DNA of 64,000 bases, from the NCBI GenBank assembly GCA_026770705.1, contig JANJGN010000052.1, positions 1,054,001 to 1,118,000 of the forward strand. Reading direction: 5' to 3'. Under the pieces are notes generated by a model. It saw only the letters and a program-made list of their open reading frames with translations, did no database searches and was not told the DNA's origin. This DNA comes from Isurus oxyrinchus. Lineage: Eukaryota. Both the position numbers and the translations under genes were made by a program. Below are positions 31,530 through 63,110 of this stretch, piece after piece (the stretch's first letter is position 1; each line of letters starts with the position of its first letter).

Positions 31530-31778
31530 TCAGTTTTTCTGGAACCTGATCTGTGCGTATTCCGTGTCCTCGCTCCTGTGCACAGTCCTGTCACCGCTGG
31601 GCAGCTTTGAAAAGTTGATGTTGGCGTAGAGAAGCTCGGCGGGATTGTCGGGGTTCCCATGTCCAACATCGCCTCCCACTGGACCTTCAGAGAGATCCCG
31701 GGGAGCTGGGGTCTCCCCCTCACTAGTTGTGTCTCTGGTTGTGTTCCGGGGCTCAGTAATCAGCACGTTCTGTTTACC
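31530..31778 (-). CDS. Siglec-like gene B, distal alternative last exon (intact ITIM + ITSM-like)
   Basis: tttctctgtAG|GGT. Reads GKQNVLITEP...AELLYANINF...DTEYAQIRFQKN*. LLYANI fits LxYxxI and TEYAQI fits TxYxxI. Confidence 0.85.
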   Translation of the reverse strand, partial: GKQNVLITEPRNTTRDTTSEGETPAPRDLSEGPVGGDVGHGNPDNPAELLYANINFSKLPSGDRTVHRSEDTEYAQIRFQKN

Positions 31779-32269
31779 CTACAGAGAAATGGAAACAGAA
31801 GATATCCTCACATCAATTACTGGTACTGATAGGGTTAAATTATTGTGCAGCCTCATTAGTGTCAGTCGTGTCTCAGTGGGTTTAACCCTTTTTTTCACTC
31901 TCTTTCTCTGTCTCTCTCGCTTTCTCTCTCTCTTTATAATTTAATCTCTATCACACTCCAACAGTGCAGCACTCCCTCAATACTGACCCTCTGACAGTGC
32001 AGCACTCCCTCAGTGCTGACCCTCCGACAATACAGCGCTCCCTCAGTACTGACCCTCTGTCAGTGCAGCACTCCCTCAGTACTGACCCTCCAACAGTGCA
32101 GCACTCCCTCAGTACTGACCCTCCAACAGTGCAGCACTCCCTCGGTAATGGCTCTGGTGAGTGATGGCTTGGAATCTGCACACAGGTGCCTGGTGTGAGG
32201 CTCAATAACATGAACCTTGTAATCAGAGAGAGGATGAGAGAGAGGGAGAGAGGAGGGACAGAGACAGAG

Positions 32270-33202
32270 TGTTATTAATCTATTAATGTTTGTATTATAA
32301 ATGCAAACTGTCTTTTTAAACAGAGGTTTAGTCTGTGTGTGTGTCTGTGTGTATTTTAATTGGATTAAAGCCAGCCAGTCTGGGTGCTTTGATGTATAGT
32401 AGTTTTGAGATGTAAACAAAGAGGTAAAGTGGTAATTTGCATTTTTAAATAAAACATTCAAAGTCTGAGAGTGAAATCTTAAACCAATCAACGTTTACAT
32501 TACTAATAAAATTGATACAATGAACGGGGATTTATTATTGGAAGAGATGGAGTTCAAAGGTCCTGATGATACATTGTGAATTTACCTTCAAACAGAAGCC
32601 ATAAGACCATCAGATATAGGAGGAGAAATTAGACCATTCGGTCCATCGAGTCTGCTCCACCATTCATACATGGCTGATATGTTTCACAAACCCCATTCTC
32701 CCACCTTCTCTCCTAACCTTTGATCCCCTGACCAATCAAGAGCCCATCAATCTCCGTCTTCTTTACACTCAAGAGCTGGGTATAACTTGAGCAGTTTTGT
32801 GTGTGCAGAGCAGACGCTTGTAACAGCAAAGCAGCTGTAAGCCTACACTTGTCTGCAAAGGAACCAAAGTGAAAGGAACCTCATTTGGAATTTGTGAGGT
32901 GAAAATGCTTTGCCTGGGTGTCTGCTTAAAGATAATGGGTTGTCTTAGAGGAGATTAGTTTGAGAATTTGTTAAAAATTTATGATAATACTAGTTTGTAG
33001 CCATGTGCATATGTTTAACTTGTGTAAATTAATATATGTCTCAAGTAGTTTGATATAAAACCATCTCAAGAACTGGTGGTCTTATTCCTGAATTTAGAGC
33101 TGCATCTCAAACATTCCACTGGGAAATATAGGTTATGACATTGTTTAAAGTTTCCCTCTGGGATTTTAAACAACAGCCTTTACCAGTTTCTGTGTCATAA
33201 CA
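32270..33202 (+). mobile_element. Solo LTR (duplicated with the tail cassette), carrying an extra CR1-tail insert at ~32598-32770
   Basis: Ends GTGTCATAACA and is paralogous to 35401-36154. Confidence 0.7.
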
Positions 33203-33337
33203 GAGAGACAGCATGATACTGAACCATTGCTGACTCCACAGATACAAATCAGTGGGTAACTGGGCTGGGAATCTGGGACACGTGTTGTCTACACACTGAG
33301 ATTGAAGCTTTGGAGTGAGTGTAAACAGCTCCTGTAC

Positions 33338-33419
33338 CTGGTGTTTCACAGAGAGTGGACTGGGGGTCAATGCAATGTCACTGGTCCCTGAAACTCTCTC
33401 CTCCATCGCTGTCTTTCTC
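33338..33419 (-). CDS. Gene B distal juxtamembrane cytoplasmic exon
   Basis: ttattgcAG|G AGA...CAG|GTacag. 82 nt, phase 2-0, reading RKTAMEERVSGTSDIALTPSPLSVKHQ. Confidence 0.8.
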
Positions 33420-60945: not shown

Positions 60946-61133
60946 CTATGAGTCTATGAGTCCATGATGCACTGTCGGAGAGTCAGTATTAAGGATGTAC
61001 TGCCTGTCAGGAGTCACTTTTTACCAGTTAAAGACCAATGGTTTGTTGGTCAACAAAGTGCAGTATGTGGGAGCTTGCTGTGCACATTTGATACTATTCC
61101 AGCTAATGTAGAATGAAGGATGTCCATACTTAC

Positions 61134-61430
61134 ATAGCACAGTCATTACGAGGGTCCGCTTCGATGAAACAGATGGATATCTCACTCTGCAGCTGAGAGT
61201 GTGTCCGTGGTGTTTGAGTGATGGGATCAGGGTCAGAACAGAAGTATGGGTCAGAGTGACACCATGCTGAGTTACAGTGTTTGAGACTGATCCAGGTACG
61301 TCAGTGGGAGTGTCCCAGGTTAAGACAGGTGCTGCTGTTCCATTGCACGTTGTGTTGAAGGTGCAGCTTACATCCACACGCTCTCCTGCAATAATTTCAG
61401 CAGGGAATATCATGGGTTTATCTGTGAAAT
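61134..61430 (-). CDS. Gene C Ig domain 2
   Basis: 297 nt, phase 1-1. DFTDKPMIFPAEIIAGERVDVSCTFNTTCNG...LSCRVRYPSVSSKRTLVMTVL. Confidence 0.93.
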
Positions 61431-62741
61431 CTAACAGACAGAGAATGGATCCTTTTAGAGAAATATAACGTGAAGCATCAGTTCAAATAGAAATCACAGT
61501 CCCACACGAGAAAGCACTTTTACAAGGATGATATCAGAACTGAGAGGTTACAATGATCATTTTAGAATTGTCTATTTTTACACTTGTTGAATCTCTGTCA
61601 CTCAGATTAATACACTCTCACTCAGTGACCCTTGATTTGACCAGATTGGGTGAGGGTGGAGGAACAGCTCACAGCTTGGGGAGAACAGACTCAGCATTTG
61701 GAAAAGGATATCGAGACACTGGAGAGGGTGGTAAAAAGCTTCACAAGGATGATCTCTGCAATGTGAGGCTTTACCTATCAGGAGAGGATGAACAGGCTGG
61801 GTCTCTGTTCTCTTGAACAGAGAAGGTTGAAGGGTGACCTCATTTGATCTTTGAAGTAGTGAAAGGTTTTGATCGAGTAGACATGGAGAGAGTGTTTCCA
61901 CTCCTCACAATGAACAAAACCAGAGGCTGACAATATAACATCCTCACTAATAAATCCAATGGGGAATTCAGGAGAAACTTCTTTAACCAGAGAGTGGGGA
62001 GAATGTGTGCTTCAAGAATCACTTCATTGGCTGTGAATCAGTTTAGGATCGTCCTGAGGTGGTGAAAGGCGCTATGGAAATGCGAGACTTGCTTTTGTAT
62101 TTTGAAAGCAGGTTTCCAAGGATGAGATGGGAACTGAGAGGTAACAACAATCAGCAGCAACTTTCCTATTTTCAAACTTGGTGGGGAATGTGTCACTGAG
62201 CTGAATACACTTTCACTCCCAGACCCTTGAATTGCCAACACTGGGGTGTGGGTGATGGAGCAGCCCACAGCTCATGGAACCCTGGCTCATCATTCTCTCA
62301 GAGATCTGGGTCACTGATCCCATTGCTCTCTGTGGGAGCTTCCTGTGTACAAACTCACTGCCACGTTAGTGACTATACTTCAAGAATTTCTTCATTTTCT
62401 GTGAAATGATTTGAAGTTTGCTGAGGTGGTGTAAGGCGCTATAGGAATGCACATCCTTCTTTTGTCAAATTGTTAGACATTTCAAAAGCATTAGGGAGAC
62501 TAATGGGAGTGGATAACCTGATAACATTGATGGACACAGTCAATATATTTAATCATTGATATTAAAGTGAGTAATAGAGGTTGCTTTAGGACTGAATTGG
62601 AAGTTATCACCCGGTTATTGAGAATCAGACAGTCTGTTATAATAAACTGTATTTTGTGTTAATATGTAAACGTCACAGTTTGTGTTATTTCCCATTGAGT
62701 GTTGTATGTGAATTGTTGAGTAATTATAACACAGCACTTAC

Positions 62742-63110
62742 CAGAAACGTGAAGCCGGGTTACAGGGTAATAGTTATGGCTCGGACCATTGTCAAATTCT
62801 ATTCTGAAAAAATAAGGTCCCGCATCTTCCCGTCTGATGCTGTTTATAATCAGGGAACAGTCGCCATCTTTCAGGTCTCCAGACAGCCGGGTCCGATGGC
62901 GGAACCGTGGTAACTCGTGACTGTGATCCTTGGAGTGAAAGGCAATGGGAGCCCGCAATTTGTATTTCTTAATATTTAACCAGATTCCGACTTGTCGTTT
63001 GTTTTCAAAATATGCTGGATAACTGTAATGACATGGAATCTGTACACACGAACCTTCCTGCGCTGTCACCTCTCGTGGAGTGTCACCTTTCCACTCTTGT
63101 AACAGTCCAA
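62742..63110 (-). CDS. Gene C V-set sialic-acid-binding-type domain (signal exon expected just beyond 64000)
   Basis: 369 nt, open. SCVQIPC, GIW, GDCSL and EDAGPYFFRIE with the essential Arg. Confidence 0.95.

What the first reader, a model, noticed from the sequence alone, without database searches (positions are those of the whole stretch)
31530..63110. Paired inhibitory/activating Siglec-like receptors with near-identical ectodomains
Seen: genes B and C share V-C2-C2 exons and introns (the same CR1 and LTR insertions) and diverge immediately after the domain-3 donor. B continues to a TM plus ITIM/ITSM tail. C continues to a TM with Arg in its N-terminal half and a ~13-aa tyrosine-free tail. 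Established: a TM basic residue with a short tail marks coupling to ITAM adaptors (Arg near the outer leaflet with FcR-gamma in LILRA/GPVI/OSCAR; DAP12 for Siglec-14/15/16). Siglec-5/14 and -11/16 are conversion-maintained pairs thought to counter sialylated pathogens. Inference: an independently evolved or ancient paired Siglec system in a cartilaginous fish.
Basis: partly seen in the sequence, partly recalled or inferred. Interest (0 to 1): 0.88.

Follow-up and report, generated by a model that had tools for sequence, protein, structure and literature searches.

The report
Shark Siglec-like activating and inhibitory pair
Two neighbouring shark immune-receptor genes of the Siglec type share a recently duplicated outer part, but one ends in a 'brake' tail and the other in an 'accelerator' membrane anchor; this extends to sharks a design described so far for primate Siglecs, though it is one of many such genes in this genome.

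Summary
The observation largely holds. Two minus-strand genes share promoter, V, C2 and C2 exons and their introns, including one reverse-transcriptase element, at 94-99% nucleotide identity. Their 3' ends are unrelated. B has a TM exon and two tandem cytoplasmic cassettes (ITIM LLYANI, ITSM TEYAQI). C has a TM exon with Arg and a 12-residue tyrosine-free tail.

Corrections:
- The ectodomains are only 88-93% identical in protein, with dN/dS about 1.3. Five of 13 V-domain differences lie in the C-C' loop.
- "Diverge right after the domain-3 donor" cannot be tested, because B's assembly gap starts 22 nt after that donor.
- RNA contigs show that the Arg-TM exon is expressed and spliced at 56218. 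The one upstream junction shown is a domain-2 end identical to B's, not C's domain 2 or domain 3.

RefSeq models from four sharks carry the same activating exon, and many carry the same inhibitory tail. The domain-2 tree groups by shark order, not by signalling type.

The best reading is two members of a large elasmobranch Siglec-like family that reshuffles activating and inhibitory 3' modules, not a unique pair. This scan had already flagged the same family on other pieces of this genome. I found no paper describing it.

The parts
62742..63110 (-). Gene C, V-set exon (phase 1 to 1) with the YFFR Arg and three Cys
   Evidence: Sequence. Pfam V-set and Ig_CD22. The top PDB hits are all Siglecs, and the Arg aligns with the sialoadhesin Arg.
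61134..61430 (-). Gene C, domain 2 (C2-set) exon with the extra Cys
   Evidence: Sequence. Pfam C2-set_2. Aligns to domain 2 of MAG and CD33.
57923..58204 (-). Gene C, domain 3 (Ig_3/I-set) exon. Whether C's mRNA includes it is not shown.
   Evidence: Sequence and Pfam. RNA contigs over it never carry C's letters at 57987, 58011 and 58081.
56057..56218 (-). Gene C, activating-type TM exon: Arg in the outer third, a 12-residue tail, stop at 56079-56081, and a splice donor 22 nt after the stop
   Evidence: Sequence. Exon-shaped depth in four runs, with contigs that break off the genome at 56218/20 and at 56057. It is 80-96% identical to the C-terminus of eight RefSeq shark proteins.
55314..55343 (-). 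Start of C's non-coding last exon; the acceptor AG lies just above 55343
   Evidence: The loose-end letters at 56057 match 55314-55343 exactly.
51125..51487 (-). Broken V exon of a partial middle copy (in-frame stop, indels, Arg replaced by Ser)
49775..50070 (-). Domain-2 exon of the partial middle copy
46910..47185 (-). Truncated domain-2 exon of a second partial copy
44892..44931 (-). Gene B, leader exon (starts MIGKYY..., phase 1 donor)
   Evidence: Found. It matches the N-termini of the shark RefSeq models.
43630..43998 (-). Gene B, V-set exon
42390..42686 (-). Gene B, domain 2 exon. Its last 27 nt equal the letters joined to the Arg-TM exon in an RNA contig.
37696..37977 (-). Gene B, domain 3 exon, complete, with donor GT at 37695-37694
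37296..37673 (.). Assembly gap inside the intron between B's domain 3 and TM exons (22 nt below the donor, 106 nt above the TM acceptor). Not filled.
37093..37189 (-). Gene B, TM exon (phase 1 to 2), no basic residue in the membrane span
   Evidence: Sequence. It is 84-88% identical to lamniform RefSeq models. The same domain-3-to-TM junction is seen in P0168, P0175, P0239 and P0255.
36290..36371 (-). Gene B, cytoplasmic exon 1, proximal cassette (phase 2 to 0)
34609..34857 (-). Gene B, proximal tail exon: FLYANP (not a consensus ITIM) and TEYAQI (ITSM). An internal donor after 34625 can lead on to the distal cassette.
   Evidence: Sequence. Serial use of the two cassettes is seen in RefSeq models P0176, P0153 and P0174.
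33338..33419 (-). Cytoplasmic exon 1, distal cassette
31530..31778 (-). Distal tail exon: LLYANI (ITIM) and TEYAQI (ITSM), then stop
   Evidence: Sequence. It is 90% identical to the tails of Cetorhinus and Carcharodon models.
983..1144 (+). Inverted second copy of the activating TM exon (1 nt different). It is part of an inverted duplication, 2-2823 against 57225-54408.

Best explanation
B and C are adjacent, same-strand members of a large elasmobranch family of Siglec-type receptors. A recent segmental duplication, or a very long conversion tract, copied promoter, leader, V, C2 and C2 exons and their introns. Divergence between the copies is 1-6% per 250-nt window.

The two copies are attached to unrelated 3' modules.
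- B continues to an uncharged TM exon and one or two cytoplasmic cassettes with ITIM and ITSM tyrosines. By analogy with mammalian CD33-related Siglecs, these would recruit SHP-1/2 and dampen signalling (inferred).
- C is followed by an old, conserved cassette: a TM helix with Arg in its outer third and a 12-residue tail. By analogy with Siglec-14 and with LILRA, OSCAR and GPVI, this would pair with an ITAM adaptor and activate (inferred).

Across sharks the ectodomains cluster by lineage while the two signalling modules are shared. The family therefore keeps producing activating/inhibitory look-alikes by recombination. B and C are one such instance, and C's ectodomain is the faster-changing partner.
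For: - Exon anatomy and phases are read directly from the sequence.
- B and C align at 94-99% identity, including a shared RVT_1 element.
- Siglec identity of the exons: Pfam V-set/Ig_CD22, C2-set_2 and Ig_3. The top 17 PDB hits of the V exon are all Siglecs, with the binding Arg aligned. Domain 2 aligns with domain 2 of MAG and CD33, including the extra Cys.
- The Arg-TM exon is expressed. In four runs from three studies and two organisms, depth is high over 56057-56233 and low or zero in the flanking intron. Contigs leave the genome exactly at the predicted acceptor and at a GT donor, and the next exon is found at 55343 behind an AG.
- Eight RefSeq proteins end in this exon at 80-96% identity. 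They come from Carcharodon carcharias, Scyliorhinus canicula, S. torazame and Chiloscyllium punctatum. Twenty-three of the fetched proteins (one with no species assigned) carry B's TM type, most with the ITIM/ITSM tail.
- The junction from domain 3 to B's TM type is present in four lamniform models.
- The domain-2 tree groups by shark order, with activating and inhibitory forms interleaved. It needs at least 6 changes of type, and the well-supported branches alone force at least 2.
- Polarised against the family, C carries 18 derived residues and B carries 7. By my arithmetic the two-sided binomial p is about 0.04.
Against: - No read or contig shown joins C's own domain 2 or domain 3 to 56218. 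The one junction displayed carries a domain-2 end identical to B's over 27 nt, with 4 mismatches to C's. It probably comes from another paralogue.
- RNA contigs over domain 3 never show C's letters at three sites.
- dN/dS of about 1.3 gives no sign of purifying selection on either ectodomain.
- B's link to its tail crosses an unresolved assembly gap.
- The V domains differ most in the C-C' loop, so a shared ligand is not assured.
- Sialic-acid binding, adaptor pairing and phosphatase recruitment are untested.
Confidence: 0.65

Rival explanations
1. C is a decaying or non-functional copy. The expressed activating transcripts come from other paralogues that carry an identical or nearly identical Arg-TM exon: the inverted copy at 983-1144, the copy reported about 3 kb beyond the window, or others. 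B then has no working partner at this locus.
For: - The only displayed junction into the Arg-TM exon carries a non-C domain-2 end.
- C-specific letters in domain 3 are absent from the RNA contigs.
- C has 18 derived residue changes against 7 in B, and dN/dS is about 1.3.
- Broken copies lie right next to it.
Against: - All four of C's coding exons in the window are open, with canonical splice sites.
- The binding Arg and the Cys pattern are kept.
- Contigs in three runs of organism A match C's TM exon with no difference, while the inverted copy differs by one base.
- Contigs drop rare variants, so absence from them is weak evidence.
Confidence: 0.2
2. Assembly artefact. The scaffold join at the gap wrongly attaches an inhibitory 3' end to B's ectodomain, or the B/C repeat is a mis-resolved copy-number or allelic structure.
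For: - The gap sits exactly where B's homology to C can no longer be followed.
- The region is full of 33-nt satellite arrays and duplications.
- The window has four further gaps.
Against: - B's ectodomain, both partial copies and all of C lie in one gap-free stretch, 37674-64000.
- B and C differ by 1-6% per 250-nt window, by a B-only insertion of about 1.5 kb and by a C-only segment of about 300 nt, which is far more than alleles would differ.
- The two contig ends at the gap fall in the same intron, with the right strand, order and phase.
- Four lamniform RefSeq models show the same exon order.
Confidence: 0.08
3. B and C are kept alike by ongoing gene conversion, as in Siglec-5/14 and Siglec-11/16, and not by a single recent duplication.
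For: - Across shark orders the domain-2 sequences of activating and inhibitory forms cluster by lineage, while the Arg-TM exon is conserved between orders. This needs repeated homogenisation or repeated module swapping.
- B's domain 2 is closer to a great white shark inhibitory model (98%) than to C's (93%).
Against: - Within the window, identity is even across about 7 kb of exons, introns and a retroelement, with no short tract of near-identity set in more diverged flanks.
- No outgroup DNA was available to date the duplication against speciation.
Confidence: 0.3

Closest known systems
Human Siglec-5 / Siglec-14 paired receptors (and Siglec-11 / Siglec-16)
   Same: - Neighbouring genes of the Siglec family.
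- Very similar N-terminal V and C2 domains.
- One partner has an ITIM and a second tyrosine motif. The other has a basic residue in the membrane span and a short tail.
(PMC4042635, PMC5701461, and the family tests)
   Different: - Here the similarity covers about 7 kb, introns included, and looks like a recent duplication.
- Protein identity is only 88-93%.
- The Arg sits in the outer third of the helix.
- The activating module is a separate conserved exon shared by many genes and several shark orders.
- B has two tandem tail cassettes.
- The adaptor is unknown.
RefSeq gene models of other sharks, named automatically 'sialic acid-binding Ig-like lectin 12/13/10/8', 'CD33-like' and 'MAG-like'. 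Examples from Carcharodon carcharias: XP_041037179 (P0017); activating-type P0161, P0165, P0179; inhibitory-type P0153, P0154, P0176.
   Same: They share the exon types at 80-98% identity per exon, with the same junctions: domain 3 to the inhibitory TM exon, TM to cytoplasmic exon to tail, and serial tail cassettes. They carry the same Arg-TM C-terminus.
   Different: - None is identical to this window's exons, so this is another species or other paralogues.
- In the great white shark models the activating forms go from domain 2 straight to the Arg-TM exon. In catshark and bamboo shark models a domain-3 type precedes it.
FcR-gamma-coupled Ig receptors with Arg near the outer leaflet (LILRA, OSCAR, GPVI, Fc-alpha-RI); cited from general knowledge, not tested here
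   Same: A hydrophobic span with a single Arg after about seven residues, and a very short tail without tyrosine.
   Different: No sequence relationship was shown. No shark adaptor was examined. The position of the Arg alone cannot tell FcR-gamma from DAP12.
Cytoplasmic tail of mammalian CD33-related Siglecs (ITIM LxYAxL followed about 20 residues later by TEYSEI/V); cited from general knowledge
   Same: B's distal cassette has LLYANI, then 23 residues, then TEYAQI. The order, spacing and flavour are the same.
   Different: The proximal cassette has FLYANP, which fails the ITIM consensus. Homology of the tails was not tested statistically.

Membership tests
Siglec family (I-type sialic-acid lectins) | N-terminal V-set Ig domain most similar to Siglec V domains | tested here: met
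   Pfam V-set at 5e-12 and Ig_CD22 at 2e-9. The 17 best PDB sequence matches are sialoadhesin, Siglec-5, CD33, Siglec-8, MAG, Siglec-10 and Siglec-7, at E 2.5e-13 to 2.9e-11.
Siglec family (I-type sialic-acid lectins) | Conserved Arg on strand F that binds the sialic-acid carboxylate | tested here: met
   The Arg of YFFRIE aligns with the Arg of sialoadhesin's YNFRFE. It is present in both B and C and lost (Ser) in the broken middle copy.
Siglec family (I-type sialic-acid lectins) | Unusual Cys pattern: three Cys in V (intra-sheet pair plus one for an interdomain bond) and an extra Cys in domain 2 | tested here: met
   The V exon has Cys-x4-Cys early and a third Cys in GDCS. Domain 2 has three Cys, and the extra one aligns with that of MAG domain 2. 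The bonds themselves are not shown.
Siglec family (I-type sialic-acid lectins) | Binds sialylated glycans | not testable with these tools
   This needs glycan arrays with recombinant ectodomains.
CD33-related Siglecs | Membrane-proximal ITIM plus distal ITIM-like/ITSM motif in the tail | tested here: met
   The distal cassette has LLYANI and TEYAQI. The proximal cassette meets only the ITSM.
CD33-related Siglecs | Groups with mammalian CD33-related Siglecs, and not with Siglec-1, -2, -4 or -15, in a phylogeny or by synteny | tested here: inconclusive
   The PDB E-values for sialoadhesin, Siglec-5, CD33 and MAG are all within about two orders of magnitude. A hepcidin gene in the window recalls the human HAMP-MAG-CD22 neighbourhood (from memory). 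No tree with tetrapod Siglecs was built.
Paired activating/inhibitory receptors | Closely linked genes with highly similar ectodomains and opposite signalling modules | tested here: met
   The genes start 19 kb apart on the same strand, with 95-97% nucleotide and 88-93% protein identity in three Ig exons, and unrelated TM and tail modules.
Paired activating/inhibitory receptors | Both partners are expressed with the predicted exon joins | tested here: inconclusive
   The Arg-TM exon is expressed and spliced, but the upstream partner shown is not C's own exon.
Paired activating/inhibitory receptors | Both partners bind the same ligand | not testable with these tools
   Five of the 13 V-domain differences fall in the C-C' loop, the loop said to set Siglec specificity (PMC8155805).
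ITAM-adaptor-coupled receptors (DAP12 / FcR-gamma type) | Single basic residue inside the membrane span and a short tail without signalling motifs | tested here: met
   Arg is at about position 8 of a 26-residue hydrophobic span, and the tail is 12 residues with no Tyr. The Arg is kept in all eight shark homologues.
ITAM-adaptor-coupled receptors (DAP12 / FcR-gamma type) | Physical association with an ITAM adaptor that depends on the basic residue | not testable with these tools
   No adaptor sequence from this genome was in hand. Co-precipitation with and without the Arg is needed.

The most novel reading that the evidence does not exclude
CD33-type Siglecs with ITIM/ITSM tails, and activating counterparts built from a dedicated, movable Arg-TM exon, already existed in the common ancestor of galeomorph sharks. 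They may date to the base of jawed vertebrates. Paired Siglec signalling would then be ancient and not a mammalian invention. In sharks the pairs would be regenerated continually by module exchange within large clusters next to the hepcidin gene, where MAG and CD22 sit in the human genome.
Probability: 0.35. Interest if true: 0.7.

Novelty: new member of a known kind. Interest (0 to 1): 0.5.

Why it matters
Papers in the searched library describe four Siglecs (1, 2, 4 and 15) as conserved across vertebrates. They treat the fast-evolving CD33-related group, with its activating/inhibitory pairs, largely as a mammalian story (PMC9630641, PMC10167051, PMC13358205).

This locus, together with RefSeq models from other sharks, shows the same design in cartilaginous fish: Siglec V domain, ITIM/ITSM tail, and a look-alike partner with a charged TM. 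If confirmed at the bench, it would give an independent, very old system for testing two questions:
- whether such pairs arise as a counter-measure to pathogens that mimic sialic acids;
- how signalling modules are exchanged between genes.

For this window alone the gain is modest, because it is one of many such loci in this genome.

Tried and rejected
The strong donor leaves phase 2, and an 82-nt exon lies between them.
- B and C as alleles or haplotigs is rejected. They lie in one gap-free stretch and differ by indels and by 1-6% per 250-nt window.
- A membrane-proximal extra C2 domain, present in some relatives, has no copy in the sequenced part of the window. It could hide in the gap. Four lamniform models do without it.
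- The search for more activating-type proteins using the last 49 residues of P0179 found only three great white shark proteins, so it was too insensitive to map the range.
- The ESM Atlas look-up of the Arg-TM exon scored at most 0.80 and named no family, so nothing was gained.
The orthologous great white shark locus could therefore not be fetched to compare gap flanks or gene order.
- The literature searches found no paper on elasmobranch Siglec pairs. Bornhofft et al. 2018 is not held.
- Read laying could be used once.
- The spliced, joined protein models of B and C were not sent to any search tool.
- The gap was not filled.
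Full report
**Layout**

The window has five N runs. The one inside the finding is 37296-37673. A self-comparison shows heavy duplication and many arrays of a 33-nt satellite.

All receptor exons of the finding lie on the minus strand. Reading from high to low coordinates:
- Gene C: V 62742-63110, domain 2 61134-61430, domain 3 57923-58204, TM exon 56057-56218. Its leader lies beyond the window end.
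- Two partial copies: a V' with a stop, indels and Arg-to-Ser at 51125-51487; domain-2 exons at 49775-50070 and 46910-47185.
- Gene B: leader 44892-44931, V 43630-43998, domain 2 42390-42686, domain 3 37696-37977, the gap, TM 37093-37189, then two tandem cassettes. Each cassette is an 82-nt cytoplasmic exon followed by a tail exon (36290-36371 with 34609-34857; 33338-33419 with 31530-31778).

Splice sites are canonical and the phases fit: 1-1 for the Ig exons, 1-2 for B's TM exon, 2-0 for the cytoplasmic exon, and 0 for the tail.

**The observation**

B and C align from the promoter to domain 3 at 94-99% identity per 250-nt window. Three interruptions break the alignment: a B-only insertion of about 1.5 kb, a C-only segment of about 300 nt, and a satellite. 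Both genes carry the same retroelement with a reverse-transcriptase domain in the intron between domains 2 and 3. The duplication is therefore younger than that insertion.

The exons are 95.6%, 96.9% and 94.6% identical in DNA, but only 89%, 93% and 88% in protein. There are 32.5 non-synonymous and 7.5 synonymous differences, giving dN/dS of about 1.3. 'Near-identical ectodomains' is therefore too strong.

Five of the 13 V-domain differences lie in the stretch that aligns with the C-C' loop of sialoadhesin. PMC8155805 describes this loop as setting Siglec specificity.

Polarised against 16-54 homologous shark sequences per domain, C carries 18 derived residues and B carries 7. By my arithmetic the two-sided binomial p is about 0.04. 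C is the faster-changing partner.

**The gap**

B's domain-3 exon is complete. The gap begins 22 nt after its donor and ends 106 nt before the acceptor of B's TM exon.

Several points favour a correct join:
- Both contig ends stop in one intron, in the right order, strand and phase.
- Four lamniform RefSeq models (P0168, P0175, P0239, P0255) join this domain type directly to this TM exon, with the same residues at the junction.

Continuity was not shown with reads.

**B's 3' end**

The strong donor of B's TM exon leaves phase 2, which does not fit the tail exon. Homologues revealed the missing 82-nt exon.

The distal tail has LLYANI (ITIM consensus) and TEYAQI (ITSM consensus). The proximal tail has FLYANP, which fails the ITIM consensus, and TEYAQI.

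Great white and basking shark models use an internal donor just after the ITSM of the first tail to read on into a second cassette (P0176, P0153, P0174). The same GT is present after 34625 in this window. B can therefore make a tail with one cassette or with two in series.

**C's 3' end**

The exon at 56218 adds a hydrophobic span with a single Arg at about position 8 of 26. A 12-residue tail without tyrosine follows, then a stop.

I laid contigs of four runs on 56000-58330 (three studies, two coded organisms; the runs are RNA by their exon-shaped depth and their splice joins, not by their records). The results:
- Depth is high over the TM exon, and low or zero in the adjacent intron.
- Contigs leave the genome at 56218/20.
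- Contigs also leave at 56057, where a GT follows. The letters beyond 56057 match 55314-55343 exactly, behind an AG.

The stop codon therefore sits 22 nt before the last exon junction, and the short tail is what is translated.

Contigs of organism A match C's exon without a difference, while the inverted copy at 983-1144 differs by one base.

The one upstream junction displayed carries 27 letters identical to the end of B's domain 2 (42392-42418). Those letters differ at four places from C's domain 2. B lies downstream of this exon, so the contig most likely comes from another paralogue with a B-like domain 2.

No join from domain 3 to 56218 was among the rows shown. Contigs over domain 3 never carry C's letters at 57987, 58011 and 58081. 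Many contigs join one domain-3 type to another, as in multi-domain paralogues.

The exon is therefore real. C's own use of it, with or without domain 3, is not shown.

**What family it is**

Pfam calls V-set/Ig_CD22, C2-set_2 and Ig_3. The V exon's 17 best PDB matches are all Siglecs, and the sialic-acid Arg is aligned. Domain 2 aligns with domain 2 of MAG and CD33, including the extra Cys.

A search of 1.84 billion representative proteins, followed by a second search, returned a large set of elasmobranch RefSeq proteins. They are automatically named Siglec-5, -7, -8, -10, -11, -12, -13, -14, CD33-like or MAG-like, and come from sharks, rays and skates. The best matches are great white and basking shark proteins at 84-98% per exon. 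None is identical. The window therefore comes from a shark whose closest sampled relatives are lamniforms.

Eight proteins end in the Arg-TM exon:
- Carcharodon carcharias, three;
- Scyliorhinus canicula, two;
- S. torazame, two;
- Chiloscyllium punctatum, one.

Twenty-three of the fetched proteins (one with no species assigned) have B's TM type.

In the great white shark the activating models go from domain 2 to the TM exon. In S. torazame (P0006) and the bamboo shark a domain-3 type precedes it.

**Evolution**

A maximum-likelihood tree of domain 2 (23 rows, 97 columns, so low resolution) separates the orectolobiform rows from the rest with strong support. It groups the lamniform rows together. 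Activating and inhibitory forms are mixed inside each group. It needs 6 changes of type, no fewer than in shuffled labels, and the well-supported branches alone force at least 2.

The ectodomains thus follow lineage while the signalling modules are shared across orders. That pattern requires repeated module exchange or homogenisation.

Within this window the even divergence across about 7 kb fits a single recent duplication as well as conversion does.

A 170-nt segment just after B's stop (31332-31501) recurs below C's TM exon (54978-55143) at 80% identity. This hints that C's last, now non-coding, exon descends from an inhibitory-type last exon. I could not exclude a dispersed repeat.

**Mechanism**

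Shown:
- gene anatomy;
- family membership by sequence;
- expression and splicing of the Arg-TM exon;
- conservation of both modules.

Inferred from established knowledge of mammalian Siglecs and other Ig receptors:
- B's tyrosines recruit SHP-1/2 and inhibit.
- C's Arg pairs with an acidic residue of an ITAM adaptor and activates.

Neither the adaptor, the ligand, nor the sharing of a ligand can be read from the sequence.

**Context and novelty**

Earlier notes and follow-ups of this scan report the same family and the same Arg-TM exon on other pieces of this genome and just beyond this window. I treated those as leads. My own searches agree with them.

In the searched library I found no paper on Siglec pairs in cartilaginous fish. 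Papers there state that Siglec-1, -2, -4 and -15 are the conserved set. The proteins exist in RefSeq under automatic names.

I class this locus as a new member of a known kind. It is of moderate interest by itself and of more interest as part of the family.

**Limits**

- The joined spliced models were not searched, only single exons by reference.
- The runs' RNA status is a guess of the tool, although the splice joins argue for RNA.

Noticed in passing
window 8250-8420, minus strand: An open frame ends in a furin-type RQKR site followed by an eight-Cys peptide of hepcidin pattern (CRFCCNCC...CGLCC). A hepcidin gene therefore sits inside the Siglec cluster. In humans HAMP lies next to MAG and CD22 (from memory), which may bear on which Siglec locus this cluster corresponds to.
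   Followed up: partly
window 19657-20064, minus strand: A further, distant Siglec-like V exon, about 32% identical to B and C. Its best PDB hits are sialoadhesin and MAG at 1e-10 to 2e-9. The open frame stops where the binding Arg would be expected (...YYTQF, stop). Unidentified open reading frames lie just below it (18845-19595); one of them had no Pfam match.
   Followed up: partly
window 2-2823 (+) against 57225-54408: An inverted duplication at 94.8% identity carries a second activating TM exon (983-1144) and its 3' exon (a match at 1889-1918). It runs off the window start, so another activating-type gene probably ends here, pointing towards the hepcidin gene.
   Followed up: partly
window 2573-2826, 8873-9210, 11211-13158, 22647-22966, 34996-35257, 38119-38461, 45696-46626, 48960-49562, 54028-54658, 58335-58679: Arrays of one 33-nt satellite, on either strand, recur in introns and between gene copies, often at the edges of duplicated blocks. 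They may be the substrate for the recombination that shuffles the modules.
   Followed up: no
window 38800-40400: A B-only insertion of about 1.5 kb in the intron above domain 3, with open frames that had no Pfam match. It is absent from C, so it is younger than the duplication.
   Followed up: partly
window 57923-58204 (RNA contigs): Many contigs join the 3' end of a domain-3-type exon back to the 5' end of a domain-3-type exon ('goes back 276'). Highly expressed paralogues therefore have several such domains in a row, as in RefSeq models P0006, P0022 and P0239.
   Followed up: partly
window 31332-31501 and 54978-55143: A 170-nt segment just after B's final stop codon recurs, at 80% identity, below C's TM exon, probably within C's last non-coding exon. 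It could be a relic of a shared ancestral last exon, or a dispersed repeat.
   Followed up: partly
window 55226-55873, plus strand: An open frame of 216 residues lies antisense to C's last intron and exon. The acceptor at 55343 falls inside it. It looks like the C-terminal part of a LINE protein but had no Pfam match.
   Followed up: partly
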